The notes: generated from the sequence alone by a model not told the origin. A stretch of 64,000 nt of DNA from IMGVR_UViG_3300020188_000808:1-64000; one strand, 5' to 3'. Shown: positions 1 through 56,183, counted from the stretch's first letter. A program made the numbers and translations.

Positions 1-80
1 ACACTATACGCATCAATAGGCCTCACTACTATACTATAAGGGTCACTACTGAACAGTTCACTAGGGTTCTCACTACTATA
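1..80 (+). repeat. Short direct repeats TCACTACT
   Basis: TCACTACT at 23-30, 43-50 and 70-77; partial TCACTA at 58-63; non-coding. Confidence 0.6.
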
Positions 81-203
81 TAGAATCATGAGTTCTTTGT
101 GATTGAGCCCGTCATCTGGGTAGAGGTGACCGGTGGTGATCAGAGGAGGATCCAGGTGGTCAAAGCCAGATCTGAGGTCTAATGGTGTCGACCTGACTTT
201 CTC

Positions 204-282
204 CAATGATATCAAGAGGTTAGGTGGGGCCAGGGGCCTCTAGTATGGCCTTTCAAAAAAGTTCAATGATTTCAAGGGGTTA
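204..282 (+). promoter_or_regulatory. Two 19-bp direct repeats resembling IHF sites
   Basis: CAATGATATCAAGAGGTTA (204-222) and CAATGATTTCAAGGGGTTA (264-282); first matches WATCAANNNNTTR exactly, second has one mismatch. Confidence 0.5.
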
Positions 283-420
283 CAAGGGTGCGGAAATCAG
301 GTCGTGTAGGGTGAATTGAACTCCGGTATCAATGTTTCCAATTACGTTCCCGGCGGGTGGATCTATCTGCGATCCTCTATGTTGAACTTCCCTCTACCTC
401 CTTGCCCTTATTGTTCTTAT

Positions 421-449
421 AGTATATGGCCAAAGGCACCTAAAGTCAA
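421..449 (-). promoter_or_regulatory. Divergent sigma70-type promoter (leftward)
   Basis: Minus strand TTGACT-17-TATACT followed by the leader ATAAGAACAATAAGGGCA, identical to the forward leader at 5578-5595. Confidence 0.75.
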
Positions 450-494
450 CCAAAAAAACCCCTAAAATAAAATTATTTTTTGGTAAAATAATGG

Positions 495-523
495 TTGACA
501 TTTGGATTCAGAGATGGTATACT
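495..523 (+). promoter_or_regulatory. Early sigma70-type promoter
   Basis: TTGACA-17-TATACT with A/T-rich upstream tract. Confidence 0.85.
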
Positions 524-558
524 GTAAAGACAATAAGGAATTAGAGAGGGCATAGAAA

Positions 559-996
559 ATGAAATTAGCGATCCACACACAATACAAAGAGAACTATGGC
601 GCACATGACTGGGATGGCCAGGGTGAGTGTCCGCAGTATTGGAAGTTCAAAGGTGGAGAGACCTTTGTTATGGCCATCGAGGATCCCAATCTTAGACCTG
701 AGAACATTGATGATCTTAAGGCGTTGATTGAGTACTCAGACCACTATCAGGAGGAGTATGTCTTAGATTGGAGTTTCGTGGACGAGGGAGAGGCTGTGTG
801 TGAGGACTGGGAGACTCCCTGGACTATATACCGTGAGGCAGATGGGGCCTACTATGCGAGCCGTTGGGTGCCTGCAGAGGACTATTGGACTCCCGGCTAC
901 AAGGGCAAGGCTCAGAGCTATAAGATGGAGCTGGGTGGCGAGAGAAGCCACTATCAAGAGGAGTACGTCAAATTGGCTGAGCCTGAGATGGCTTAG
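559..996 (+). CDS. Hypothetical early phage protein
   Basis: ORF with own promoter and GAGGGCA RBS (546-552). Confidence 0.85.
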   Translation: MKLAIHTQYKENYGAHDWDGQGECPQYWKFKGGETFVMAIEDPNLRPENIDDLKALIEYSDHYQEEYVLDWSFVDEGEAVCEDWETPWTIYREADGAYYASRWVPAEDYWTPGYKGKAQSYKMELGGERSHYQEEYVKLAEPEMA

Positions 997-1029
997 ACGT
1001 GGACAGGTAGGGAGTGGAAACCCGGTTAG

Positions 1030-1089
1030 GCCTTAGACCTATATACAACTAAGGCGGGAGAGCTAGGCGCCCTCATAGAAAGGCCTAGC
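1030..1089 (+). ncRNA. Tandem hairpins; second displays GCCCUC in its loop
   Basis: GCCTTAG/CTAAGGC stem (1030-1055); GCTAGGC/GCCTAGC stem (1062-1089) with loop GCCCTCATAGAAAG. Confidence 0.55.
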
Positions 1090-1145
1090 ATTTATCTGTG
1101 GCATTTGTGCAACACCTGAGCCTTCGCCCATCGGGAGCGTAGTTT

Positions 1146-1174
1146 ATTATAACATATTTTGGACGAGATGTCAA
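1146..1174 (-). promoter_or_regulatory. Divergent antisense sigma70 promoter
   Basis: Minus strand perfect TTGACA-17-TATAAT; no downstream minus-strand gene evident. Confidence 0.8.
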
Positions 1175-1208
1175 CCAAAATAATTAGATTTTTTTTGGTA
1201 AAAAATGG

Positions 1209-1237
1209 TTGACCTTAGACTATTTTGGTGCTATAGT
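1209..1237 (+). promoter_or_regulatory. Early promoter
   Basis: TTGACC-17-TATAGT. Confidence 0.8.
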
Positions 1238-1273
1238 GTAACTATAAACTAAACAACGCAAAGAGGGCAAACT

Positions 1274-1537
1274 ATGCAAAACATTAAATTTCCGTTCGCA
1301 GTACAACTTGCAGGGGACAGCATTTGGGGCTATGAGGGTCCGCAAACTGTCTCAGTCTCAGACATCGCTGTGTACGAGGATGAGGACTACAAGATGATCG
1401 ACGTAGTACACGATACAACGTGGGAGATCTACACAGACAGTGGCTTTGAGGCCGCAATTAGCAAAGCACTTGGCTATGAGGTGCAATTTACAGAGCAAGG
1501 TATGCAACAAAACGGCATGGCCTCTATGGAAGCATAG
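1274..1537 (+). CDS. Hypothetical early protein
   Basis: ORF, promoter, GAGGGCA RBS. Confidence 0.85.
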   Translation: MQNIKFPFAVQLAGDSIWGYEGPQTVSVSDIAVYEDEDYKMIDVVHDTTWEIYTDSGFEAAISKALGYEVQFTEQGMQQNGMASMEA

Positions 1538-1551
1538 CATAAAAAAAATGG

Positions 1552-1580
1552 TTGACACTATAGCATTTTGGTGCTATAGT
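1552..1580 (+). promoter_or_regulatory. Early promoter
   Basis: TTGACA-17-TATAGT. Confidence 0.85.
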
Positions 1581-1603
1581 GTTAATATAATTAGGAGGGC
1601 AAT

Positions 1604-2260
1604 ATGAAAAAGACTATTATAGCAACAGCGATCTTGGCATGTTTGCATACGGCGGCCGCAGGGGCAGAGAAGCTGACATCATTCGATCACGCGGCAGAGC
1701 TAACAGATCAAGCCAAGACCATACTATTCCAAGAGCTGAACGATCAGAACGCAGAGAACCACACACATCCTGCGATCACTTGTCTAGCAGAGAACATCTA
1801 CTTTGAAGCACGAGGCGAGAGCTTTAAGGCCAAGATAGCAGTGGCCAACGTCACACGTAATAGAGTAGAGGACAGCAGATGGCCGAGTACCTACTGTGGT
1901 GTGGTTCAGCAGGGACCTGTGAGGGAATCATGGAAGACCAAGAAGATCAAGGACCTTCCGGACAACCAGCGAGTGTATTACCCACGAAAGCACAGATGTC
2001 AGTTCAGTTGGTACTGTGATGGGGTCAAAGATGTGATATGGGCCAACATGGAACGCACAGGAGAGACCATCGAAGGCAATGCTAGAGCTTGGAGAGAATC
2101 AGTACGTATTGCGATAGCCACACTGGCTCAGGGTGATTACATCATCAAGGACAACACTGGTGGGGCCACTCACTACTATAATCACAACCTAGTTGATCCG
2201 CATTGGGCAGACAGCTATAAAACCACAGCCGTTGTGGGCAATCATACGTTCAAAAAATAG
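1604..2260 (+). CDS. Cell wall hydrolase, SleB/Hydrolase_2 family, with signal peptide
   Basis: Motifs CLAENIYFEARGE, CQFSWYCDG, GATHYY, GNHTF; hydrophobic N-terminus. Confidence 0.9.
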   Translation: MKKTIIATAILACLHTAAAGAEKLTSFDHAAELTDQAKTILFQELNDQNAENHTHPAITCLAENIYFEARGESFKAKIAVANVTRNRVEDSRWPSTYCGVVQQGPVRESWKTKKIKDLPDNQRVYYPRKHRCQFSWYCDGVKDVIWANMERTGETIEGNARAWRESVRIAIATLAQGDYIIKDNTGGATHYYNHNLVDPHWADSYKTTAVVGNHTFKK

Positions 2261-2263
2261 GGG

Positions 2264-2292
2264 TTGACAATTGGATTGGATGATGCTATTAT
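2264..2292 (+). promoter_or_regulatory. Early promoter
   Basis: TTGACA-17-TATTAT. Confidence 0.8.
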
Positions 2293-2320
2293 ATAAACAC
2301 AATAAGGAAATGAGGGCACA

Positions 2321-2644
2321 ATGAAAATTTTAGACATAGAAACAGATGCAACATGGCAGAGTGGTTCAAGCCTCGCAGGCTATGTGACAACCACTTATGA
2401 GGATATCGTGGCCAAGTTTGGTGAGCCAACAGCCGCTGGTGATAAGACCACCGCAGAATGGACACTTGAATTCAAGGTTCTAGAGGACGATGCAGAGGAC
2501 GAGGACGATTGGGACTACGTCTACGCAACCATCTATGACTGGAAAGAATCAAGCACGCCTATGGGGCAGTACCGTTGGCACATTGGTGGGTTCGACAATC
2601 GAGCTGAAGAATGTGTGCAACAGGCCCTGGAAAATAATGGTTGA
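2321..2644 (+). CDS. Hypothetical early protein
   Basis: ORF, promoter, GAGGGCA RBS. Confidence 0.85.
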   Translation: MKILDIETDATWQSGSSLAGYVTTTYEDIVAKFGEPTAAGDKTTAEWTLEFKVLEDDAEDEDDWDYVYATIYDWKESSTPMGQYRWHIGGFDNRAEECVQQALENNG

Positions 2645-2669
2645 CATTTGGATAAAGAGGTGCTATTAT
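2641..2669 (+). promoter_or_regulatory. Early promoter
   Basis: TTGACA-17-TATTAT. Confidence 0.8.
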
Positions 2670-2695
2670 ATAAACATAATAAGGAGGGCAACTAG

Positions 2696-2902
2696 ATGGG
2701 CATGTATAATCTAATAGAAGACAACGTAAACAAGTTCTGGGACATAGCCAACGACAAGGCTGGAGAGTGCGAGAGCTTGGATGAATTCGTTGAAGCAATG
2801 ACTCCGCACGTGGATCTACTACAGGGTAGTTCCGAAGGAGAGTGCGTTGAGGAAGCAATCAGCGAGGCTTGGGGCGAATACTGGGCCAAATATAATATGT
2901 AA
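2696..2902 (+). CDS. Hypothetical acidic early protein
   Basis: ORF with AGGAGGGCA RBS. Confidence 0.8.
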   Translation: MGMYNLIEDNVNKFWDIANDKAGECESLDEFVEAMTPHVDLLQGSSEGECVEEAISEAWGEYWAKYNM

Positions 2903-2909
2903 TTAGGGG

Positions 2910-2938
2910 TTGACTTTTGGTTAACTTGGTGCTATTAT
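2910..2938 (+). promoter_or_regulatory. Early promoter
   Basis: TTGACT-17-TATTAT. Confidence 0.8.
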
Positions 2939-2968
2939 ATAAGAACAATAACAAACAAAGAGGGCAAA

Positions 2969-3169
2969 ATGAAAACAACGATTAACACAATTTCCGGACT
3001 ATTGATAGCAGTTGGACTGATGGCAATGGCAGGTTCAGCCAACGACTGTGATGGTGCTTGTATGGACACGGCCAACACCTTAGGTGAGATGCTAATGGTA
3101 GCAGGTGTAGGTTTTACCATGGTGCTGTTTGGTGCAATGGTCTTAATCAGCAACAGCCAGGAGCAATAG
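2969..3169 (+). CDS. Small membrane protein
   Basis: Two hydrophobic segments; GAGGGCA RBS. Confidence 0.8.
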   Translation: MKTTINTISGLLIAVGLMAMAGSANDCDGACMDTANTLGEMLMVAGVGFTMVLFGAMVLISNSQEQ

Positions 3170-3170
3170 G

Positions 3171-3335
3171 ATGTTGGAAGTAATTGGATTCATCGCTGTA
3201 GCATATCTTATCTTTAAATTCGCACCCGCAATCATCGAAGCAGGGTTCAAGTTCGCTGTGATCTGTTTGGGATTCGTAGCGTTCCTGTTCATCTGTGCAT
3301 GGATTTGGGGTAGCATTTTGGTAATGATTAATTAA
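3171..3335 (+). CDS. Small membrane protein (54 aa, not in ORF track)
   Basis: MLEVIGFIAVAYLIFKF...WGSILVMIN; AGGAG upstream; two hydrophobic segments. Confidence 0.7.
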   Translation: MLEVIGFIAVAYLIFKFAPAIIEAGFKFAVICLGFVAFLFICAWIWGSILVMIN

Positions 3336-3344
3336 AATAAATGG

Positions 3345-3373
3345 TTGACATTCAATTAAATTGAGTGTATACT
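3345..3373 (+). promoter_or_regulatory. Early promoter
   Basis: TTGACA-17-TATACT. Confidence 0.85.
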
Positions 3374-3404
3374 GTAAGTATAACAATTAGGAAACGAGGG
3401 CAAT

Positions 3405-3629
3405 ATGAAACTTAAAAACATTGGTTCAAATATGACAGAGATCGAAGTTAACGGCAAGAGCATCATGTTCAGCTATGAGACTCCGGTTGCAGGCTACTGT
3501 GAGCAGGGTGCGTTTAGAACAGACACCAAGTTCAGCGTAACCACTAGCAAACAGATCAACAAGTACCTAGGTGGCAAAGACGTAGGTAGGGTTGTACCCC
3601 AGGCTTGGATTGAAGGTTTGGTAGCCTAA
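3405..3629 (+). CDS. Hypothetical early protein
   Basis: ORF, GAGGGCA RBS. Confidence 0.85.
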   Translation: MKLKNIGSNMTEIEVNGKSIMFSYETPVAGYCEQGAFRTDTKFSVTTSKQINKYLGGKDVGRVVPQAWIEGLVA

Positions 3630-3823
3630 TGAAAACGATTTTGGTAGTCCTTTGTGCTATGAGCTTGACCGCTTGTGGTACAATGACTCCAAAAGATATG
3701 TTGAAGACCGCGAATGCGTTCCGAAATGTATCTAAGATTACCGCTCCAGGTGTAGAAGAAGAATTGGTTGTTATGACCAAAGACATCTTTGATCCTGCAA
3801 GGGGTGGTGGTTTCAACAAATAA
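3629..3823 (+). CDS. Putative lipoprotein
   Basis: Signal peptide with lipobox LTAC; TAATG coupling to the previous gene. Confidence 0.7.
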   Translation: MKTILVVLCAMSLTACGTMTPKDMLKTANAFRNVSKITAPGVEEELVVMTKDIFDPARGGGFNK

Positions 3824-3826
3824 TGG

Positions 3827-3855
3827 TTGACATACTCACCATTAGATGTTATTAT
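3827..3855 (+). promoter_or_regulatory. Early promoter
   Basis: TTGACA-17-TATTAT. Confidence 0.8.
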
Positions 3856-3893
3856 AACTTGAGTATGAATAGGCAAACAATAGGAGGCCAACA

Positions 3894-4223
3894 ATGAGTA
3901 CCACTAAACTGTACACGGTAGCCGGCACGTCAAACAACAACGGCAAAACAAAAGTAAGGTTCGCGAATGACTATGTGAGTAGATTCAAGATCCTTGTAAA
4001 GAATCAACACGAGGACATCAAAATCGTAGAACTGCCATCAGCAATGAACAAGGCAGATGTATGTAAGTTCTTGTCAACTCATGCAGAGTTCCAGACAGAA
4101 GCACAACAGTCTGCGATCAATGAGTTCGTTGTAAGAAACATCAAACTTGATGCGACTCCAACAGCACCGGCACAGCCTGTAGCTGAAGCAGAGACCATTG
4201 AGGTAGAGCTAGAGACTGCATAG
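3894..4223 (+). CDS. Hypothetical protein
   Basis: ORF with canonical AGGAGG RBS. Confidence 0.85.
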   Translation: MSTTKLYTVAGTSNNNGKTKVRFANDYVSRFKILVKNQHEDIKIVELPSAMNKADVCKFLSTHAEFQTEAQQSAINEFVVRNIKLDATPTAPAQPVAEAETIEVELETA

Positions 4224-4266
4224 TATTGCAGTCCAATAGGGGAGGCACTGACTAAGAGCCTTCCTT

Positions 4267-4359
4267 TGAAGAAGCTGGTTGTGAATGGTTAATACTAGTT
4301 CACGTTGCATTAAACCAGAGCCCGAACGTTGCGTACCAAGGCTCGGCCAGCTTACTTCA
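4267..4359 (+). ncRNA. Putative three-way-junction structured RNA
   Basis: Closing stem TGAAG-AAGCTGG/CCAGCTT-CTTCA with inner stems GTGAA-TGGT/ACTA-TTCAC and GAGCC/GGCTC; two more hairpins upstream (4214-4233, 4238-4266). Confidence 0.5.
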
Positions 4360-4377
4360 TAAATTTTCATTTAGAGG

Positions 4378-4406
4378 TTGACAACCGTCCTTGGTTGTGT
4401 TATAGT
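4378..4406 (+). promoter_or_regulatory. Promoter of tRNA pair
   Basis: TTGACA-17-TATAGT. Confidence 0.85.
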
Positions 4407-4456
4407 AAGACATCATAAGAAGATCAGAAGAGGATCAAATCAAATCATTTTAGTTA

Positions 4457-4533
4457 CTGCCCTTAGCTCAGCTGGATAGAGCAACAGCCTTCTAAGCTGT
4501 AGGTCGTAGGTTCGAATCCTACAGGGCAGGCCA
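4457..4533 (+). tRNA. tRNA-Arg(UCU)
   Basis: Acceptor CTGCCCT/AGGGCAG, anticodon loop CTTCTAA, T-loop TTCGAAT, encoded CCA. Confidence 0.95.
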
Positions 4534-4538
4534 ACAAT

Positions 4539-4626
4539 GCTCGCGTGATGGAATTGGTAGACATACCGGACTTAAAATCCGGAGGCTGTAATGGCCGTGG
4601 CGGTTCGAGTCCGCCCGCGAGTACCA
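4539..4626 (+). tRNA. tRNA-Leu(UAA)
   Basis: Acceptor GCTCGCG/CGCGAGT, anticodon loop CTTAAAA, long variable arm, GGTTCGAGTCC, encoded CCA. Confidence 0.95.
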
Positions 4627-4638
4627 AAGGTAAGTACC

Positions 4639-4679
4639 GCCCGGGGGAGCAACCGCCCTCATGTAAGACTTCCCCGGGC
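4639..4679 (+). ncRNA. GC-rich hairpin displaying GCCCUC
   Basis: GCCCGGGGGAG/CTTCCCCGGGC 11-bp stem; loop CAACCGCCCTCATGTAAGA; directly downstream of tRNA-Leu. Confidence 0.6.
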
Positions 4680-4694
4680 AGGGAAATAAAATGG

Positions 4695-4723
4695 TTGACA
4701 AGTGATCCAATTGGTGTTATAGT
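4695..4723 (+). promoter_or_regulatory. Early promoter
   Basis: TTGACA-17-TATAGT. Confidence 0.85.
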
Positions 4724-4756
4724 ATATGTATAGTTAGAACAAACGGAGGGCATCCA

Positions 4757-4945
4757 ATGATTAGAGTACACACAACAGGACTTGAAGGTGAACGTTTCCT
4801 CAAGCTAGATGAAGTCAACATCCACACACAGAAGATTGACTCTTACAACGGCGCACCATACATCTTGTTCGAGCACAAGGACTATCCAGGAGGAGCGTTG
4901 AGTGCTACATTCGATGGCACCTATTGGGACTGTGATTTAGATTAA
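4757..4945 (+). CDS. Hypothetical early protein
   Basis: ORF, GGAGGGCA RBS. Confidence 0.8.
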   Translation: MIRVHTTGLEGERFLKLDEVNIHTQKIDSYNGAPYILFEHKDYPGGALSATFDGTYWDCDLD

Positions 4946-4952
4946 TTAGGGG

Positions 4953-4981
4953 TTGACAACTGCACCTTTTGGTGCTATAGT
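4953..4981 (+). promoter_or_regulatory. Early promoter
   Basis: TTGACA-17-TATAGT. Confidence 0.85.
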
Positions 4982-5008
4982 ATAAACATAATAACAAATG
5001 AGGGCACT

Positions 5009-5281
5009 ATGAACAATCAATATGAAGTTACCAAGCAGAACGCAAAACTAGCCGACATTGGTCGTGCGATGATGGACTATTCAGAGTTCTACGGTGTTGC
5101 TAATGGACTGGGTCATCTCAAAGATGCTCAGCTGGCCACACTGAATCAGCTCACCCATGTAGGCGGAATGCTTACCAAAATTGGTGTGCTGTTTGGACCG
5201 CGAATGAGTGATCTAAGCGATAGCGACAGAGAATTAGTTGCAAAGTTCAGCAAAAAAGAACTTGACATTCAGAACGTTTGA
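5009..5281 (+). CDS. Hypothetical early protein
   Basis: ORF, GAGGGCA RBS. Confidence 0.85.
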   Translation: MNNQYEVTKQNAKLADIGRAMMDYSEFYGVANGLGHLKDAQLATLNQLTHVGGMLTKIGVLFGPRMSDLSDSDRELVAKFSKKELDIQNV

Positions 5282-5290
5282 TTGTATACT
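5262..5290 (+). promoter_or_regulatory. Early promoter
   Basis: TTGACA-17-TATACT. Confidence 0.8.
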
Positions 5291-5322
5291 GTAAGTATAA
5301 ACAATAAAGAAGAGAGGGCAAA

Positions 5323-5541
5323 ATGGCAACAGATTTGAAATCACACGCACAGGGCGTATCATTGACAAGGTTCGCTGGTGGTGTGGACCGCGGAGTATGC
5401 GTCCAGGTCACAACCAAGAAGCGTCAACCTGTAGGCACAGAGTTCTTTGACTCATTGCAATTGACACGAGCACAGGCCGCGGCATTGGCGGCTGACTTGA
5501 TGGACTTTGCTCAGGGCAGAGAAACAGAAGATTTTGAATAA
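5323..5541 (+). CDS. Hypothetical early protein
   Basis: ORF, GAGGGCA RBS. Confidence 0.85.
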   Translation: MATDLKSHAQGVSLTRFAGGVDRGVCVQVTTKKRQPVGTEFFDSLQLTRAQAAALAADLMDFAQGRETEDFE

Positions 5542-5548
5542 TTAGAGG

Positions 5549-5577
5549 TTGACAACTGTAGCATGTGATGCTATAGT
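5549..5577 (+). promoter_or_regulatory. Early promoter
   Basis: TTGACA-17-TATAGT. Confidence 0.85.
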
Positions 5578-5624
5578 ATAAGAACAATAAGGGCACACTA
5601 ACACACACAACTGAGAGGGTTAAC

Positions 5625-6629
5625 ATGACAACACAAATTGAAATTAAAAGCGGCACGTACAAGATCCGTGGCAAAGACGTAGAACTTGCGGGCATGGTCT
5701 TTCCAATGGTGGAAGAGTTCAAAGTAGGTAGCCAAGGTGGTTACGTAACAGTGGATGGATCAGCAATGGCTGGCTTCCCAGACCGTAACATCAAGATCAA
5801 AGTTAACAGCAGTGATGACTATGCTGTTACTAAAAAGAAGACAACTGTACGTGAAGAAACAGATGAAGAGACCATTGAGCGTCTTAGAGAACGTTTCCAG
5901 ATCCTAGAAGACATGACCAAAGCATGTAAGAAAGGCGATGTACGTGCAATGATCGTAACAGGCCCTCCAGGTGTGGGCAAGAGTTTTGGTGTAGAGAAAG
6001 TGCTAGGCAAGCATGACATGATCGCAACGTTAGGTGAACGACCTGCCAAGTATCAGGTAGTCAAGGGTGCTATGAGTGCAATTGGTCTCTACTGTAAACT
6101 GTTCAACTATGCAGACAAAGACAATGTACTAGTGTTTGATGACTGTGACTCAATCCTACAAGAAGACCTGAGTTTAAACATCTTAAAAGCCGCACTGGAT
6201 TCGAAAGCTTCAAGACGTATACATTGGAACACAGACAGTTTCAAGTTGCGTAACGAAGGTGTGCCGGATTCATTCGAGTTCAAAGGCTCATGCATATTCA
6301 TTACCAACATCAAGTTTGAAAACGTTAAGAGCAAGAAGATGAGAGATCACCTAGCGGCCATTGAAAGTAGATGCCACTATATCGATCTTACCATTGACAG
6401 CGAACGTGAGAAGATGTTGCGTATCAAACAAATCGTAGGTGATGGCATGTTAGCTAAACATGCACTAGATGAAGAAACACACGAACGAGTGGTAGACTTC
6501 ATCGACATCAACAAAAAGAATCTCCGAGAGCTTAGTCTAAGGACTGTGCTTAAGGTGGCCGATCTCGCTAAAGCCTTTCCAGACAACTGGGAAGCAATGG
6601 CTGAGAATACAGTACTGCAACGAGCCTAA
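5625..6629 (+). CDS. AAA+ family P-loop ATPase
   Basis: Walker A GPPGVGKS, Walker B LVFDDCD, sensor FITN, arginine-finger-like ESRC. Confidence 0.85.
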   Translation: MTTQIEIKSGTYKIRGKDVELAGMVFPMVEEFKVGSQGGYVTVDGSAMAGFPDRNIKIKVNSSDDYAVTKKKTTVREETDEETIERLRERFQILEDMTKACKKGDVRAMIVTGPPGVGKSFGVEKVLGKHDMIATLGERPAKYQVVKGAMSAIGLYCKLFNYADKDNVLVFDDCDSILQEDLSLNILKAALDSKASRRIHWNTDSFKLRNEGVPDSFEFKGSCIFITNIKFENVKSKKMRDHLAAIESRCHYIDLTIDSEREKMLRIKQIVGDGMLAKHALDEETHERVVDFIDINKKNLRELSLRTVLKVADLAKAFPDNWEAMAENTVLQRA

Positions 6630-6696
6630 TAGCCCTCAACCCTGGCTCTGTACTGTACCGAACCCCTGCTAGTGTGCCCTCGCTATGCAGGGGTTC
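6608..6696 (+). ncRNA. Two tandem hairpins each displaying (U)GCCCU(C)
   Basis: TACAGTAC..GAGCC/GGCTC..GTACTGTA with GCCCTC (6632-6637) in the loop; GAACCCCTGC-TAGTG/CGCTA-GCAGGGGTTC with loop TGCCCT (6675-6680). Confidence 0.65.
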
Positions 6697-6746
6697 ACCT
6701 TGACAAAAACTCCATAAAATAAATGAAAAAAACCTGCTGATTTTGG

Positions 6747-6775
6747 TTGACATATTGGATTGCAGACTGTATACT
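6747..6775 (+). promoter_or_regulatory. Early promoter
   Basis: TTGACA-17-TATACT. Confidence 0.85.
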
Positions 6776-6807
6776 GTAAGTATAAACAATAAAGAAGAGG
6801 GTACGCA

Positions 6808-7137
6808 ATGAGTTATATCACAGACAAATGGAACGCAGGTGAAGTACACTTCCAAGATGGCGCGGCTGGTTGGTTGTTTGATTCAGGTGAGTTCCGTCCG
6901 CTTATGGACGATGCTATGCGAGAACTACACTATGAAGGCCTGGTTGATGCAGACTGTGTAGAGATCACAGCGTTTGCCAGAGACTTGTACACAACCAAAT
7001 CAATTGCAGAGTACCGTGTAGCACAGAGTCAACGTAGTGCAGAACAGATTGCTGAAGAACGAAGCGAAGCTAGAGCCGCTATGGGCGAGGGTGTAGAGAT
7101 GGTAAACATCATAACAGGAGAACGATACACAACTTAG
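6808..7137 (+). CDS. Hypothetical early protein
   Basis: ORF, GAGGGTA RBS variant. Confidence 0.85.
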   Translation: MSYITDKWNAGEVHFQDGAAGWLFDSGEFRPLMDDAMRELHYEGLVDADCVEITAFARDLYTTKSIAEYRVAQSQRSAEQIAEERSEARAAMGEGVEMVNIITGERYTT

Positions 7138-7154
7138 AGTTGTGTATTTTTTGG

Positions 7155-7183
7155 TTGACCTTTGGCTCAACTGAATGTATTAT
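7155..7183 (+). promoter_or_regulatory. Early promoter
   Basis: TTGACC-17-TATTAT. Confidence 0.75.
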
Positions 7184-7214
7184 AATAGTATAAACTAAAC
7201 AAAGCGAGGGCAAT

Positions 7215-7598
7215 ATGCAAACAACAACACAAACAACAGACACAGAACTATTAGTAGACACAGCACGTAAGGCCGCTGAAGGTGCACAGGCCAAGTTCCT
7301 AGCAGAGTGGACAGCCAACACAGGTGGCAATGAGTATGGTGAGCCAATGTACTGTGGCTTTGCTTGGGTTACTATACACCCAGAGCACAAGGGCAACACT
7401 AGGTTGGGTAAGCTAGAACGTAGAGTAATAGAGAGCATGGGCTTTCGTAAGGACTGGACAGGCAAGGCTTATCAACTGTGGAACTGCACAGGCTATGCTG
7501 GTCAGAGCATGGACGTTAAAGAAGCAGGGGCACAGGCCTATGCTGAGGTACTGCGAGGTGCAGGGTTTAAAGCATACATGGGTAGCAGAGCAGACTAA
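7215..7598 (+). CDS. Hypothetical early protein
   Basis: ORF, GAGGGCA RBS. Confidence 0.85.
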   Translation: MQTTTQTTDTELLVDTARKAAEGAQAKFLAEWTANTGGNEYGEPMYCGFAWVTIHPEHKGNTRLGKLERRVIESMGFRKDWTGKAYQLWNCTGYAGQSMDVKEAGAQAYAEVLRGAGFKAYMGSRAD

Positions 7599-7609
7599 GG
7601 GAGGTCACA

Positions 7610-7729
7610 ATGTATACACTACACGTACCAGCAGGCACATATGCAGAGACTAGCCTACTACGGCTAGCAGTACTAGTCTTAGCACATAGGCTAGAGCACT
7701 TGTTCAAGGGTGAAGGCTTTAGAGATTAG
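7610..7729 (+). CDS. Small hypothetical protein (39 aa, not in ORF track)
   Basis: GGGAGGT RBS; MYTLHVPAGTYAETSLL...GEGFRD. Confidence 0.6.
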   Translation: MYTLHVPAGTYAETSLLRLAVLVLAHRLEHLFKGEGFRD

Positions 7730-7767
7730 TCCTAGCCTCTGAGGAGCGTGACACTCCATCAAGTCAC

Positions 7768-7802
7768 AGAAGGAGGATCGGAAACGGTTCTCCTTTTCTT
7801 TT
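7768..7802 (+). terminator. Intrinsic terminator ending the early region
   Basis: GGAGGATCG-GAAA-CGGTTCTCC stem followed by TTTTCTTTT. Confidence 0.8.
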
Positions 7803-7992
7803 GACCCCTGGAGGCATAAGAAAAAAATAAAAAATAATTTCGGCCGGGGGGCATATATATAATATTTTCAAACACTTACACAGCACATGCATGGTCTAAT
7901 TCCACCACCCAACTTTGAAAAGTACTTCACCTTATTTTTTTGTAATCTAATTTTTTACCCTGCAGGACCCATTTCGGAAAATAAATACATGT

Positions 7993-8178
7993 ATGCACAA
8001 GGACGTTCCCACACTAGAAGACCGTGTACTAGCTATCAAACTGCGTATAGCACAGTTCAAAGCTGAACACCCAGGGTTATACACTAGTCATACTACTGCA
8101 CACACTAGCAGTCATACGACTACTACTACTCGTACAGCTACTACTAGCATCAAGGACAAACTCAATAGCATACGCTAA
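7993..8178 (+). CDS. Small hypothetical protein, Thr-rich tail
   Basis: TAAATA 5 nt upstream of the ATG. Confidence 0.55.
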   Translation: MHKDVPTLEDRVLAIKLRIAQFKAEHPGLYTSHTTAHTSSHTTTTTRTATTSIKDKLNSIR

Positions 8179-8322
8179 GAGTGCCTCGCGTGTAGTACTA
8201 GTATAGTCGCTACACATGATTAACTCAATGTGTGTGTTGTTAAGTGTATACATAATGATACGCACACAGGTTTAAATACTACTAGTACACAGTCAGGGTA
8301 ATCTATTTAGGGGGCTAAGTCA

Positions 8323-8805
8323 ATTATCGATCCGTTCACAGCCATAGCGGCGGCTACCACTGCATTCAATACTGTTAAGAAGTTTGTACATGCAGGACAA
8401 GAACTAGAGAACACACTTGGTCAAATGGGCAAGTGGTATACTAGTGTGAGTGACTTTAGACATGCACAACAGCAGGCCAAGAACCCACCATTGTTTAAAA
8501 AACTGTTTGCCGCAGGTAGTGTAGAGGAAGAAGCACTAGCACTACTAGTACACGAAAAGAAAATAGCAGAACAAGAAAAAGAACTACAGCAGATGCTCAA
8601 CATGCGTTATGGCTGGGGCACATGGGATGAACTAGTACAGATGAGGCGTAAGATACGTGCCAAGCGAGAAGCTACTGTATACGCACAAGAACAACGTCAA
8701 CGAGCGTTTATTGAAGCTGTGACCATAGGGGCTATGATCATAGCGATGTGTGTTGTCATCGGCGGTATTGTATACGCTGTGGGTCTAGGGCAAGGACGCT
8801 GGTAA
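8323..8805 (+). CDS. Hypothetical membrane protein; probable ATT start
   Basis: Frame is open 34 codons upstream of the ATG at 8425 (IIDPFTAIAAATTAF...); AGGGGG before ATT at 8323; C-terminal TM helix. Confidence 0.75.
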   Translation: MIDPFTAIAAATTAFNTVKKFVHAGQELENTLGQMGKWYTSVSDFRHAQQQAKNPPLFKKLFAAGSVEEEALALLVHEKKIAEQEKELQQMLNMRYGWGTWDELVQMRRKIRAKREATVYAQEQRQRAFIEAVTIGAMIIAMCVVIGGIVYAVGLGQGRW

Positions 8806-9027
8806 ATGCTACATGCGTTCATGTTGATGGTGCTCATAGCTGATCAACCACAACCAAATCCAATGTATTTTCGTAGCATAGATGTATGCCAATACTATGC
8901 GGCACGTGTACCACGTCAATACGGCAATTATGGTAGCAAACACCTAGTACCTGCAGAGCATAGAATAACTGCTTACTGCAAGCCTGTGTACATTAATAGC
9001 AACACTAAGACCCTATACGATCACTAG
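8806..9027 (+). CDS. Hypothetical protein
   Basis: ORF abutting the previous stop; hydrophobic N-terminus. Confidence 0.75.
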   Translation: MLHAFMLMVLIADQPQPNPMYFRSIDVCQYYAARVPRQYGNYGSKHLVPAEHRITAYCKPVYINSNTKTLYDH

Positions 9028-9275
9028 GTTTAAACGCATTTAAACAGCGTTATACGCTTGTTTCCACGTCTGAGCAGTATGTGTACCCTAAAACACCTTA
9101 AGTGCAAAATAAGAGCCATTTAGGCTGGATTTAGGCACACTACAGACACCGTAAATGCATGGTAAAAAACACCCACGAAAGAGGTTTACATTGTGATTTA
9201 AGAGGTGGATAAAATTTTGCGTACTGCACTTCGTGCTCTAAAATTACCGCGATCGCCTAAAGGCTCTAAATGGCT

Positions 9276-9734
9276 TTACCGCTTCGCGGCTTTGTCTGCA
9301 CATGCAAACCAATGTGCAAGTTCTGGATGCTTGTCCTGGTTGGGTATTAGTTGTGTGGGCAATGGCGCATCTCCCAAACTGTTGAGCATGTCCTTGTAGA
9401 CCTGTGCATGATCACGCCATTCAGGATTGTTGGCTATCCAAAATATCACCCTGTCCAAGTATACGTCATAGTCTGGTGTTAGACTGTTTGGGGGAAGTGT
9501 TTGATCTTGTGTGTGACTCAGCTCTACAACTACACCGTAGTGTTCTTTGAGTTCGTCTATCCACTGTAGCTGATCCAAACTAGCTGTAACTGTTAGAGCA
9601 CTATGTACAAACTCAATGCGTACAGGATGTCCGTTGGTCTTTGTGGCTTCTTGAAAGTGCCATTCAACTTCTTGTTCTATGTCAGGCCATTCACTGCCAT
9701 AGTGTTTGAATCCATGTCCTTGTAGTCTAAGCAT
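9276..9734 (-). CDS. Hypothetical protein
   Basis: Start reassigned to the ATG 5 nt after TAAATA (9740-9745). Confidence 0.7.
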   Translation of the reverse strand: MLRLQGHGFKHYGSEWPDIEQEVEWHFQEATKTNGHPVRIEFVHSALTVTASLDQLQWIDELKEHYGVVVELSHTQDQTLPPNSLTPDYDVYLDRVIFWIANNPEWRDHAQVYKDMLNSLGDAPLPTQLIPNQDKHPELAHWFACADKAAKR

Positions 9735-55621: not shown

Positions 55622-56183
55622 AGAATTATTTTCTATTCCTATATTGGAACATAGTGTTCCAGAACGCATTGCAAATGAAGTTGAACAGTTTGTAGTGCCA
55701 AGACTGTCTTTAATTCCAAGACCTGATAACAATGCTCCCCACGCTACTGATTACTTTGAAGATAAAAAAGTAGTACATCTAATCAACGATGTGCCTGAAT
55801 TATTTGGTGAGATACAAGATTGTGTTAATAGATTTCAACAACAATCTAGTATTAAACATTTACATGACGTTAATCAATACACTTGGTGGACACAAGACTA
55901 TCACGAAGGCGATATACATACTGAACACGAACATGGTATGAATAAGATATCAGGAGTGTATTGGGTAAGAGCTAATGAAAACGCTGGTGGGTTATGTTTT
56001 AGAAATCCTAATCCATATGTTGAATATGCACATAACGAAAACTCACAGTACGGCCGCCGACAATTCGAATTCCAACCTATAAAGGGCAAGTTATTACTTT
56101 TCCCTTCTTACTTAAAACATGCAGTAATGCCTAGTAGTAAAAACGTTGTTCGAACTACTATAGCATTTAACGTAGTACGTTAA
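55608..56183 (+). CDS. 2OG-Fe(II) oxygenase-like protein
   Basis: HEH, SGVYW, FPSYLKHAV, RTTIAFN. Confidence 0.8.
   Translation: MSVFRELFSIPILEHSVPERIANEVEQFVVPRLSLIPRPDNNAPHATDYFEDKKVVHLINDVPELFGEIQDCVNRFQQQSSIKHLHDVNQYTWWTQDYHEGDIHTEHEHGMNKISGVYWVRANENAGGLCFRNPNPYVEYAHNENSQYGRRQFEFQPIKGKLLLFPSYLKHAVMPSSKNVVRTTIAFNVVR

What the first reader, a model, noticed from the sequence alone, without database searches (positions are those of the whole stretch)
546..7212. Candidate anti-RBS RNA system: shared GAGGGCA leader and four hairpins displaying its complement
Seen: 11 early genes carry GAGGGCA just before the start codon (546, 1263, 1595, 2312, 2684, 2960, 3396, 4746, 5000, 5314, 7206), with variants at 5589 and 6797. 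The final GCA does not pair with the standard anti-SD, so ribosome binding alone does not explain it. Seen: four hairpins with unrelated stems in the same region all carry GCCCTC at the loop (1069-1074, 4655-4660, 6632-6637, 6676-6681). In the last one the loop is exactly TGCCCT. Two extend to GCCCTCAT, matching the ATGAGGGC leaders at 2310 and 4998. Inference: RNAs processed from 3' UTRs or the tRNA trailer could pair with all early RBSs and act as a collective translational shut-off or timer. This is loosely analogous to P1 C4 antisense RNA and to T4 RegB targeting of early SD sequences. I do not recognise this architecture as described.
Basis: partly seen in the sequence, partly recalled or inferred. 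Interest (0 to 1): 0.9.

Follow-up and report, generated by a model that had tools for sequence, protein, structure and literature searches.

The report
Early-gene leaders matched by hairpin-loop RNA
In this uncultured jumbo phage and its relatives, nearly all early genes share an unusual ribosome-binding leader, and conserved hairpins display its exact complement in their loops; the two motifs change together between phage lineages, which points to an undescribed RNA-RNA control of early-gene translation.

Summary
GAGGGCA sits 2-6 nt before 11 early start codons, and GCCCTC occurs four times in early non-coding sequence where 0.24 is expected. The window is the first 64 kb of a 268-kb uncultured jumbo myovirus (IMG/VR). 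Each GAGGGCA lies inside a repeated sigma70 promoter-leader cassette, and middle and late genes never use it.

In 46 of 46 distinct related loci (clade A), the 3' UTR of a conserved AAA+ ATPase gene carries 2-6 GCCCTC copies. Of these, 92% lie in predicted hairpin loops against 5% in shuffled controls. The stems differ and covary.

A sister clade uses GGAGCGAA leaders with UUCGCUCC loops. A third uses GGAGAGAG leaders with CU-tract loops. Neither of the first two pairs occurs in the other clade.

The complementarity therefore looks selected, and the positions outside the Shine-Dalgarno core covary. The best reading is a private anti-leader RNA that pairs with early ribosome-binding sites, probably to repress them as a class. 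Three things are untested: whether it acts in trans or in cis, the sign of the effect, and whether the RNA is processed. Only about 2-3 independent motif switches support the covariation. No Rfam family or paper describes this. I rate it a new variant of loop-to-Shine-Dalgarno antisense control.

The parts
495..561 (+). Promoter-leader cassette 1: TTGACA-17-TATACT, GAGGGCA at 546-552, ATG at 559.
1209..1276 (+). Cassette 2: GAGGGCA at 1263-1269, ATG at 1274.
1552..1606 (+). Cassette 3: GAGGGCA at 1595-1601, ATG at 1604. The gene has an endolysin-family (phrog_938) match.
2264..2323 (+). Cassette 4: ATGAGGGCA, motif at 2312-2318, ATG at 2321.
2641..2698 (+). Cassette 5: GAGGGCA at 2684-2690, ATG at 2696.
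2910..2971 (+). Cassette 6: GAGGGCA at 2960-2966, ATG at 2969.
3345..3407 (+). Cassette 7: GAGGGCA at 3396-3402, ATG at 3405.
3827..3896 (+). Cassette 8 with a non-matching leader, GGAGGCC at 3883-3889, ATG at 3894. Predicted pairing to the loops is weak (-6 to -7 kcal/mol).
4378..4626 (+). Promoter plus tRNA-Arg(UCU) at 4457-4533 and tRNA-Leu(UAA) at 4539-4626.
4695..4759 (+). Cassette 10: GAGGGCA at 4746-4752, ATG at 4757.
4953..5011 (+). Cassette 11: ATGAGGGCA, motif at 5000-5006, ATG at 5009.
5262..5325 (+). Cassette 12: GAGGGCA at 5314-5320, ATG at 5323.
5549..5627 (+). Cassette 13, leader of the AAA+ ATPase gene. It is a variant with AAGGGCA at 5589-5595 and GAGGGT at 5615-5620. Relatives normally have GAGGGCAATATG here.
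5625..6629 (+). Conserved AAA+ ATPase gene (phrog_1250). Its fold resembles the Orc1/Cdc6, RFC and Hda group. Its 3' UTR carries the loop array in all relatives of clades A, B and D.
6747..6810 (+). Cassette 14: variant GAGGGTA at 6797-6803, ATG at 6808.
7155..7217 (+). Cassette 15: GAGGGCA at 7206-7212, ATG at 7215.
1054..1099 (+). Hairpin H1. The loop at 1069-1082 is GCCCUCAUAGAAAG. A homologous module follows the tRNAs in L009.
4637..4682 (+). Hairpin H2 in the tRNA trailer. The 19-nt loop at 4650-4668 holds GCCCUCAU. An equivalent hairpin with different stems occurs in 11 of 22 clade-A tRNA trailers.
6608..6657 (+). Hairpin H3, which spans the ATPase stop codon. The 5' arm is the last codons. 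The loop at 6627-6643 is UAA plus GCCCUC.
6660..6696 (+). Hairpin H4. The hexaloop UGCCCU at 6675-6680 is closed by a 5-bp helix that covaries across 38 relatives.
1146..1174 (-). Consensus sigma70 promoter on the - strand (TTGACA-17-TATAAT) pointing into H1. It is conserved in five other loci. Its RNA would carry GAGGGC (a leader mimic) and has no ORF. Whether it belongs to the system is a possibility, not shown.

Best explanation
This is a private leader / anti-leader RNA pair. About 15 near-consensus sigma70 promoters each drive a short, A-rich, unstructured 5' leader. The ribosome-binding site in that leader is an idiosyncratic (G)AGGGC(A) instead of a canonical Shine-Dalgarno sequence.

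The same early transcripts also make RNA hairpins whose loops display (U)GCCCUC. These lie in the 3' UTR of a conserved AAA+ ATPase gene, with the first one spanning its stop codon. In the window and about half of relatives, one also lies in the tRNA trailer.

Shown here: the loop motif is conserved, it is held unpaired by covarying stems, and it changes together with the leader motif between phage clades.

Inferred: the loops base-pair with the early leaders through a 6-7 bp, G+C-rich loop-to-linear contact that overlaps the ribosome-binding site. This occludes 30S binding and gives class-wide negative control of early-gene translation. Middle and late mRNAs use ordinary AGGAG- or AGGA-type sites and are not matched.

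Moving both partners away from the canonical SD/anti-SD sequence would make the control specific to the phage's own early class. Three things are not established: whether the loop RNA acts as a released stable fragment in trans or within long read-through transcripts in cis, whether the effect is repression, and how it is timed.
For: - Window statistics: searches give 11 GAGGGC and 4 GCCCTC in early non-coding sequence against 0.50 and 0.24 expected, with 0 of 2000 shuffles reaching either count.
- Cassette context. Genes without their own promoter (starts at 3171 and 3629) lack the motif.
- Class specificity: one search found no GAGGGC before 64 middle and late ORFs. In one search, predicted leader-loop duplexes are -13 to -19 kcal/mol for early leaders against a mean of -6.3 for late ones (Mann-Whitney p = 3e-7). 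They are also stronger than the same leaders' pairing to the 16S tail (-6 to -12).
- Accessibility: one search gives a corrected net of -5 to -10 kcal/mol for the 6-bp core, against -3.7 for GAGG:CCUC.
- Conservation: the first 80 related loci came (210 loci in all over). All 46 distinct clade-A arrays contain GCCCTC, 124 copies in total. Of these, 114 lie in MFE hairpin loops, with P(unpaired) 0.88 against 0.41 for all array nucleotides. The flank-shuffled control gives 5%.
- Stem covariation: the closing helix is 91.6% paired against 71% in shuffles and 29-53% when slid, with 36 double changes.
- Leader-loop covariation in clade A: 280 of 417 unique promoter-led leaders have GAGGGC, and 1 has GGAGCG.
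- Leader-loop covariation in clade B: of 220 leaders, 72% have GGAGC, 42% have GGAGCG and none has GAGGGC. All 16 clade-B arrays carry GAUUCGCUCC and none carries GCCCTC.
- Clade D has hairpins with 18-24-nt CU-tract loops and GGAGAGAG-type leaders.
- The ATPase tree shows clades A (100/99) and B (99/96) each monophyletic.
- Leader flanks carry only 0.1-0.6 bits of information, so the motif is not conserved merely by cassette copying.
- Subclade L049/50/56/60 has AAGGGCA leaders. These still match the hexaloop UGCCCU.
Against: - There are no expression, processing or interaction data. Everything rests on sequence.
- Only about 2-3 independent motif switches underlie the covariation, although each involves 3-4 positions outside the SD core.
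- The seventh position (leader A/U against loop U/A) shows no locus-level correlation (rho = -0.01). Only about half of the loops can pair with it.
- In hairpin H4 the last C of GCCCUC is itself paired in the stem.
- In the window, 4 loops face about 13 leaders, so stoichiometric titration would need the loop RNA to accumulate.
- Leaders and loops are made from the same class of promoters. A delay has to come from differential RNA stability, which is assumed.
- H4 in the window lacks a U-run, although it has one in many relatives.
- The stop-codon-proximal position of the first copy is conserved in clades A, B and E. That hints at a cis role tied to the ATPase mRNA.
- Some early leaders (3883, and 33% of clade-A leaders) lack the full motif.
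Confidence: 0.55

Rival explanations
1. Cis-acting element of the ATPase transcript or of read-through transcripts. The anti-leader loops pair with a leader on the same RNA molecule. That leader could be the ATPase mRNA's own 5' leader, giving 5'-3' closure relieved by terminating ribosomes. It could also be the next gene's leader when transcription reads through, giving an insulator. Other early leaders would share the motif mainly through concerted evolution of the promoter-leader cassettes.
For: - The first motif copy lies 2-6 nt after the ATPase stop codon in clades A, B and E. Its hairpin uses the last codons as its 5' arm, so translation termination would remodel it.
- The array is tied to this one gene across deep divergence.
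- In L186 the ATPase's own leader GGAGGAGCAA is a perfect 10-nt complement of the loop.
- There are few terminators in the early region, so many transcripts may end at the array.
- PeSL-type cassettes are known to recombine (PMC2839356).
Against: - Arrays hold 2-6 loops, more than one leader needs.
- tRNA-trailer copies sit on a transcript with no leader of its own.
- Leader flanks are nearly uninformative while the motif is kept in 67-77% of 417 distinct leaders. That indicates selection at each leader, not simple copying.
- The window's own ATPase leader is one of the poorer matches.
Confidence: 0.2
2. Protein-recognised motifs. The extended early leader would be the target of a phage-encoded nuclease or translational repressor, working like T4 RegB at GGAG(A-rich) or like RegA. 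The pyrimidine-rich loops would bind a different protein, such as ribosomal protein S1 or a termination or processing factor. On this view the complementarity is a by-product of purine-rich SD regions facing pyrimidine-rich loops.
For: T4 shows that an extended early-specific SD consensus (GGAGRAYARAA) can be a nuclease/S1 site (PMC3014915). Loops in all clades are C/U-rich.
Against: - The clade-specific positions are complementary base for base, including purines in the loops and pyrimidines in the leaders: GC against GC, CGAA against UUCG, AGAG against CUCU. A general purine/pyrimidine rule does not predict this.
- No RegB-, RegA- or RNA-binding family was found among 18 early ORFs. Only 64 kb of the 268-kb genome was seen.
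Confidence: 0.1
3. The functional RNAs are leader mimics, not anti-leaders, at least at some sites. The - strand is transcribed from its own promoter, and its hairpins display GAGGGC. They would act as a decoy or sponge for whatever binds early leaders. On this view the + strand GCCCTC at those sites is only the passive complement.
For: A 12/12 consensus - strand promoter at 1174-1146 points into H1. The same promoter module follows a GCCCTC hairpin in L027, L031, L033, L037 and L051, and no ORF follows it. A second leftward cassette at 449-421 has a leader-like sequence without an ORF.
Against: - The ATPase 3' arrays hold 121 of the 181 distinct + strand GCCCTC copies counted in clade A. They have no - strand promoter and are often followed by a + strand U-run: TTTTTT is present in 24 of 46 clade-A arrays and 16 of 16 clade-B arrays.
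- On the - strand RNA the GAGGGC is partly paired in MFE folds.
- This rival can coexist with the main explanation, as a sponge of the anti-leader.
Confidence: 0.1
4. There is no RNA function. The shared leader reflects only repeated PeSL-like cassettes, and the GCCCTC copies are chance, relics of inverted cassette fragments, or sites for a double-strand DNA-binding protein.
For: The leader does sit in a repeated promoter cassette. PeSL cassettes with a promoter, SD and ATG are known in T4-type phages (PMC2839356, PMC4122927).
Against: - The motif is invariant in 46 of 46 arrays with unrelated stems, and 92% of copies are in loops against 5% in controls.
- GAGGGC is essentially absent from the arrays (1 copy), so they are not inverted repeats of leaders.
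- Strand orientation is strict: leaders always carry the purine strand and loops always the complement.
- A site for a double-strand DNA-binding protein has no reason to sit in the loop of an RNA hairpin or at a fixed distance from start codons.
Confidence: 0.05

Closest known systems
C-rich-loop base-pairing sRNAs that occlude Shine-Dalgarno sequences (S. aureus RsaE and related Rsa RNAs; Geissmann et al. 2009, PMC2790875)
   Same: An unpaired C-rich motif (UCCC there, GCCCUC or CGCUCC here) is displayed in hairpin loops, sometimes in several copies per RNA. It is complementary to the G-rich ribosome-binding sites of many mRNAs. In RsaE this blocks formation of the initiation complex.
   Different: Here the element is phage-encoded and sits in an mRNA 3' UTR or tRNA trailer, not in a free-standing gene. 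The predicted targets are the phage's own whole early class, through a shared non-canonical leader. Leader and loop have co-diverged as a private pair. There is no sequence or Rfam relationship. Expression and mechanism are untested.
PeSL (promoter-early stem-loop) cassettes of T4-type phages (PMC2839356, PMC4122927)
   Same: Repeated strong sigma70 early promoters with an AT-rich upstream region, ending in an SD and ATG. They flank small ORFan genes in a variable early region of a large myovirus.
   Different: PeSLs are defined by a stem-loop built into each cassette, and they are proposed to drive recombination. Here most cassettes have no stem-loop. The hairpins are few and separate, and they carry a conserved loop complementary to the leader. 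That relation is not described for PeSLs.
T4 RegB/S1 cleavage of early Shine-Dalgarno regions, and RegA repression (PMC3014915)
   Same: A class-wide post-transcriptional shut-off of early mRNAs, acting at an extended early-specific ribosome-binding-site consensus.
   Different: In T4 the effector is a protein and the motif is GGAG plus an A-rich tail. Here the candidate effector is RNA. The motif usually lacks GGAG (19% of clade-A leaders have it), and no RegB or RegA homologue was seen in the window.
3' UTR-derived and tRNA-spacer-derived regulatory RNAs (for example the 3'ETS-leuZ sponge; background knowledge, papers listed but not read)
   Same: Regulatory pairing sequences embedded in the 3' end of an mRNA or in a tRNA trailer, which share the parent transcript's promoter and terminator.
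   Different: Those act on host sRNAs or mRNAs, usually with Hfq and a linear seed. Here the seed is in hairpin loops, and the predicted targets are a phage's own leaders.
P1/P7 C4 antisense RNA
   Same: A phage RNA processed from a longer transcript that pairs with a ribosome-binding region to block translation.
   Different: C4 has a tRNA-like fold, a single target operon and an immunity function. Rfam's C4 family does not match anywhere in 1-9500.

Membership tests
PeSL cassettes (T4-type phages) | Strong sigma70-consensus early promoter with an AT-rich upstream tract | tested here: met
   15 sites of the form aaTGGTTGACA-N17-TATAnT with 10-11 of 12 consensus matches.
PeSL cassettes (T4-type phages) | A stable stem-loop (often GGGG...CCCC) integrated in each cassette, between or overlapping the -35 and -10 elements or just upstream | tested here: not met
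   The cassette spacers show no inverted repeat. Only about 6 hairpins accompany 15 promoters, and they lie separately.
PeSL cassettes (T4-type phages) | Shine-Dalgarno sequence and ATG of the downstream ORFan at the 3' end, in a variable (hyperplastic) region | tested here: met
   The leaders end in an RBS plus ATG. The early ORFs have no family or only unknown-function families. Gene content differs between relatives.
PeSL cassettes (T4-type phages) | Recombination between cassettes and mini-circle formation | not testable with these tools
   This needs PCR on phage DNA.
C-rich-loop anti-SD sRNAs (RsaE type) | A conserved, unpaired C-rich motif in hairpin loops | tested here: met
   114 of 124 motifs are in MFE loops, with P(unpaired) 0.88. 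The shuffled control gives 5%. The closing helix covaries.
C-rich-loop anti-SD sRNAs (RsaE type) | Complementarity to the ribosome-binding sites of multiple mRNAs | tested here: met
   There is 6-7 nt of complementarity to 11-13 of 14 early leaders in the window and to 67-77% of 417 clade-A leaders. The two motifs covary across clades.
C-rich-loop anti-SD sRNAs (RsaE type) | Expressed as a discrete, stable RNA that blocks 30S initiation-complex formation | not testable with these tools
   No transcript or toeprint data are available.
C-rich-loop anti-SD sRNAs (RsaE type) | Sequence and structure homology to a described RNA family | tested here: not met
   The permissive Rfam 15 scan of 1-9500 returned only the two tRNAs above threshold. 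Nothing was found at the hairpins.
P1 C4 antisense RNA | Match to the Rfam C4 covariance model (tRNA-like processed antisense RNA) | tested here: not met
   There was no C4 hit at E <= 1.
T4 RegB target sites | GGAG followed by an A-rich tract at early SDs | tested here: not met
   GGAG is present in only 19% of clade-A leaders, and the conserved core is (G)AGGGC(A).
T4 RegB target sites | A regB-like endoribonuclease gene in the phage | tested here: inconclusive
   No hit was found among 18 early ORFs, but only 64 kb of the 268-kb genome was available.
3' UTR-derived regulatory RNA | The pairing element lies between a stop codon and an intrinsic terminator shared with the mRNA | tested here: met
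   Arrays start at the ATPase stop codon. TTTTTT is present in 24 of 46 clade-A arrays and 16 of 16 clade-B arrays. In the window itself H4 lacks a U-run.
3' UTR-derived regulatory RNA | Release by endonucleolytic processing | not testable with these tools
   This needs 5'-end mapping.

The most novel reading that the evidence does not exclude
A family of uncultured aquatic jumbo phages runs an RNA-only timing circuit built on a private, co-evolving SD/anti-SD code. All early mRNAs carry a non-canonical leader. A multi-hairpin anti-leader RNA is made from the 3' UTR of an early AAA+ gene and from tRNA trailers. It accumulates and shuts off the whole early class in trans without touching middle, late or host messages. 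RNAs driven by - strand promoters that display the leader motif (near 1139 and 414) would act as sponges that tune the circuit. Different clades have re-coded the pair (GAGGGC/GCCCUC, GGAGCGAA/UUCGCUCC, GGAGAGAG/CU-tract), giving naturally orthogonal translation-control modules.
Probability: 0.3. Interest if true: 0.9.

Novelty: new variant of a known kind. Interest (0 to 1): 0.8.

Why it matters
How large lytic phages end the early phase is understood mainly through proteins, such as T4 RegB, RegA and promoter shut-off. A conserved RNA element that recognises the shared leader of an entire temporal class would be a different solution. It would also be the first case I know of where a phage's ribosome-binding sites and an anti-RBS RNA have co-diverged into lineage-specific private pairs.

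The idea is directly testable with simple reporters, because nature supplies compensatory variants (clade A against clade B). If it works, it gives ready-made orthogonal leader and anti-leader parts for synthetic translation control. It also shows that regulatory RNA biology can be read from metagenomic phage contigs by covariation between separate loci.

Tried and rejected
- Extended pairing of the leader with the 16S 3' tail. By hand alignment, GAGG pairs, but the next G and C face A and C, so the pairing does not extend. The phage's own middle and late genes use canonical AGGAG or AGGA sites, which argues for a host with a normal anti-SD. The host itself was not identified.
- Near relatives in cultured phages. 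No DNA match was found beyond the tRNAs. The closest cultured homologues of the ATPase, in PA5oct and Yersinia phiR1-RT, have no anti-SD motif after the stop codon.
- Clade C (55% ATPase identity). It has a conserved AGTTACC right after the stop codon, but its RBS consensus is AAGGAAT. This is not complementary, and most other AGTTACC copies are coding.
- Fine-scale covariation of the seventh position. Leaders ending A or T were compared with loops preceded by T or A, locus by locus. There is no correlation (rho = -0.01), although the pooled frequencies mirror each other.
- RNAcofold of whole hairpins with leaders. This is uninformative because loop-to-linear contacts are pseudoknots that cofold cannot form. 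I replaced it with duplex energy plus opening energies.
- tRNA coincidence. The acceptor stem of the window's tRNA-Arg is CUGCCCU/AGGGCAG, the same hexamers as the loop and leader. The stem varies freely among clade-A relatives, and CTGCCC also occurs in clade B. I treat it as chance.
- Rfam and literature searches found no description of this element.
- Function of the ATPase. A good model (pLDDT 85) resembles Orc1/Cdc6, RFC and Hda-type AAA+ proteins. This gives no link to RNA.
- A RegB- or RegA-like early protein was not found.

Full report
**What the window is.** The window is identical to the first 64 kb of IMG/VR contig IMGVR_UViG_3300020188_000808, which is 267,783 bp long (locus L001). 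It encodes a 1083-aa tail sheath, 42-49% identical to those of jumbo myoviruses Atu_ph07 and PA5oct. It also encodes a terminase, helicases and a UvsX-like recombinase. No cultured phage is close at the DNA level.

Positions ~0.4-8.5 kb form a rightward cluster of small ORFan genes at 44-46% G+C. The rest is mostly leftward middle and late genes at 35-37% G+C.

**Checking the observation.** All 11 GAGGGCA sites are present on the + strand, and there are no others on that strand in 64 kb. Each lies 2-6 nt before an ATG. The two variants are as described.

GCCCTC on the + strand occurs five times, all within 1-7 kb. Four copies are non-coding, and one (5962) is in the Walker-A codons. Within the 2193 non-coding nucleotides of 1-7300, the counts are 4 GCCCTC and 11 GAGGGC against 0.24 and 0.50 expected. 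No shuffle out of 2000 reached either count.

Folding places all four non-coding GCCCUC copies in hairpin loops:
- H1, 1054-1099, with a 14-nt loop.
- H2, 4637-4682, with a 19-nt loop.
- H3, 6608-6657, whose loop contains the stop codon.
- H4, 6660-6696, with the hexaloop UGCCCU (-26.3 kcal/mol, z = -6).

H1 and H3 are not individually significant. Two other early-region structures (4224-4370 and 7124-7148) lack the motif.

Every GAGGGCA sits in a repeated cassette of about 65-75 nt: aaTGGTTGACA, then N17, then TATAnT, then an A-rich leader, then GAGGGCA, then N2-6, then ATG. There are 15 such promoters, one of which drives the two tRNAs. Genes without their own promoter (starts at 3171 and 3629) have other ribosome-binding sites.

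This resembles the PeSL early cassettes of T4-type phages (PMC2839356, PMC4122927). It lacks the integrated stem-loop that defines PeSLs. Before 64 middle and late ORFs the sites are AGGAG, GGAGA or AGGA types, and GAGGGC never occurs. The motif is therefore a mark of the early class.

**Relatives.** Homologues of the 334-aa AAA+ ATPase gene (5625-6629, phrog_1250) retrieved 210 IMG/VR loci in three scans.

In clade A (53 loci, 46 distinct downstream regions), the ~150 nt after the ATPase stop codon always contains GCCCTC. There are 124 copies, 2-6 per locus. The first copy lies 2-6 nt after the stop codon.
- 114 of the 124 copies lie in MFE hairpin loops.
- The mean probability of being unpaired is 0.88, against 0.41 for all nucleotides of the arrays.
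- With flanks shuffled and the motif held in place, only 5% land in loops.
- Stems are unrelated in sequence between loci.
- For the commonest class (..GGAUG-UGCCCU-CGUCC..), the five closing pairs are 91.6% paired across 38 distinct sequences, against 71% in shuffles. When slid by 1-3 columns they are 29-53% paired.
- That helix shows 36 double-sided changes.
- A hairpin with GCCCUC in a large loop also follows the tRNA cluster in 11 of 22 clade-A loci, again with different stems.

**Covariation between leaders and loops.**
- Clade A: of 417 distinct promoter-led leaders, chosen without reference to the motif, 280 have GAGGGC within 18 nt of the ATG. 321 have AGGGC and 1 has GGAGCG.
- Clade B (the sister clade): of 220 leaders, 159 have GGAGC, 92 have GGAGCG and none has GAGGGC. 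The consensus is AAGGAGCGAAcc.
- All 16 distinct clade-B arrays carry GAUUCGCUCC(C), about two copies each, and none carries GCCCTC. No clade-A array carries TCGCTCC.
- Clade D has a hairpin with an 18-24-nt CU-tract loop after the same gene, for example CUCCUCUCUCCUCUCUCCUCC. Its leaders are of the type GGAGAGAG or GAGGAGAGA.
- Clade E has UUGCUCCUUA right after the stop codon and AAGGAG-type leaders.

The positions outside the Shine-Dalgarno core are complementary in each case: GC with GC, CGAA with UUCG, AGAG with CUCU. The locus-by-locus table is almost purely diagonal. On the ATPase tree, clades A (100/99) and B (99/96) are each monophyletic and are sisters.

The number of independent switches is therefore small, about two or three. 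Each one involves several concerted base changes in dozens of leaders and in all loops.

Leader positions flanking the motif carry only 0.1-0.6 bits of information. The motif is thus maintained at each leader and is not simply copied along with the cassette. A subclade with AAGGGCA leaders still matches the hexaloop UGCCCU.

**Energetics.**
- Leader-loop duplexes are predicted at -13 to -19 kcal/mol for 13 of the 14 early leaders. The GGAGGCC leader at 3894 reaches only about -7.
- Late leaders average -6.3 kcal/mol (p = 3e-7).
- The same early leaders give -6 to -12 kcal/mol against the canonical 16S tail.
- With opening costs included, the 6-bp core nets -5 to -10 kcal/mol, against -3.7 for GAGG:CCUC.
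- The leader motif is mostly unpaired (0.52-0.96).

These figures are rough, and they do not model the geometry of a loop contact.

**Interpretation.** The simplest account of a conserved, structurally displayed loop motif that co-varies with the complement in many separate leaders is direct RNA-RNA pairing at the early ribosome-binding sites. Because the site overlaps the SD, the likely outcome is reduced initiation. Because only early leaders match, the effect would be class-specific.

Moving both partners off the canonical SD/anti-SD sequence would keep the element from touching late or host messages. I give this reading 0.55.

The main rival (0.2) is a cis role. The first copy hugs the stop codon, its hairpin borrows the last codons, and the array is tied to one gene across deep divergence. 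It may therefore close the ATPase mRNA on itself or silence leaders on read-through transcripts.

Protein-based readings do not explain base-for-base complementarity at the clade-specific positions. Readings based on chance or on DNA-level effects are contradicted by loop placement, strict strand orientation, and the absence of GAGGGC from the arrays.

**A complication.** A 12/12 consensus promoter on the - strand (1174-1146) points into H1. The same promoter module follows a GCCCTC hairpin in five other loci, with no ORF downstream. Its RNA would carry GAGGGC, a leader mimic. At those sites the - strand RNA may be the functional product, or it may be a sponge for the anti-leader. Folding of the - strand RNAs is not decisive.

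A second leftward cassette (449-421) has a leader-like AAGGGCAAGGAGG..GAGGGAAG sequence and no obvious ORF. It is conserved in L031.

**Comparison with known systems.** The closest mechanism is the class of C-rich-loop sRNAs that pair with SD sequences, typified by RsaE (PMC2790875). The closest architecture for the repeated leaders is the PeSL cassette. The closest functional parallel is the T4 RegB/RegA shut-off of early mRNAs (PMC3014915). The closest parallels for location are 3' UTR-derived and tRNA-spacer-derived regulators.

None of these matches as a family:
- Rfam finds nothing at the hairpins and no C4 match.
- The PeSL stem-loop criterion fails.
- The leaders mostly lack GGAG.
- No RegB-like protein was seen.

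Literature searches found no description of a shared early leader matched by terminator-loop complements. I therefore class it as a new variant of a known kind, antisense occlusion of ribosome-binding sites. The new features are a phage-wide early-class target set and a co-evolving private code.

**Limits.** All evidence is computational and comes from uncultured phages. The host is unknown. Only 64 kb of the genome was examined. Independent covariation events are few. The sign, timing and cis or trans mode of action remain inferences.

Noticed in passing
window 1146-1174 (- strand), RNA running left from about 1139: A perfect sigma70 consensus promoter on the - strand points into hairpin H1. 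The same GGTTGACA-N17-TGTTATAAT module follows a GCCCTC hairpin in L027, L031, L033, L037 and L051. No ORF follows it, and the RNA would carry GAGGGC (a leader mimic).
   Followed up: partly
window 300-449 (- strand): A leftward promoter cassette (TTGACT-17-TATACT at 449-421) has a leader-like AAUAAGGGCAAGGAGGUAGAGGGAAG sequence but no nearby start codon. A homologous stretch exists in L031 (~1790-1960). It may be another non-coding RNA carrying leader-like motifs.
   Followed up: partly
window 1-9000 versus 9000-64000: There is a sharp composition step. The early rightward cluster is 42-46% G+C, while the rest of the phage is 33-40%.
   Followed up: no
window 4224-4370: A strongly structured 147-nt non-coding region (-48.4 kcal/mol, z = -4.0) lies between gene 3894-4223 and the tRNA promoter. 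It has no GCCCUC loop. Its first hairpin buries a GGGGAGGCA sequence in the stem.
   Followed up: no
window 4457-4533: The tRNA-Arg(UCU) acceptor stem is CUGCCCU/AGGGCAG, the same hexamers as the loop and leader. The stem varies among relatives, so this is probably chance. Both phage tRNAs encode their CCA ends.
   Followed up: yes
window 5625-6629: The conserved ATPase is annotated 'thioredoxin' in some phage records. Its model is an AAA+ protein resembling the Orc1/Cdc6, RFC and Hda group, with an N-terminal beta domain (pLDDT 85). The 'thioredoxin' label looks wrong.
   Followed up: partly
L058, L059, L061, L081-L136 (clade C loci), just after the ATPase stop codon: A different conserved heptamer, AGTTACC, directly follows the stop codon in this clade. 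It is not complementary to the local RBS consensus (AAGGAAT), and its role is unknown.
   Followed up: partly
window 20-85: Three copies of TCACTACT(A)TA lie within 65 nt at the very start of the contig. They may be a genome-end or other regulatory repeat.
   Followed up: no
window 56180-63889 (- strand): A single 2569-aa ORF. It was not analysed.
   Followed up: no
window 3883-3896: One promoter-led early gene (ATG at 3894) has a canonical GGAGGCC site instead of GAGGGCA. It is predicted to escape loop pairing (-6 to -7 kcal/mol), so it may be a deliberately exempt early gene.
   Followed up: no
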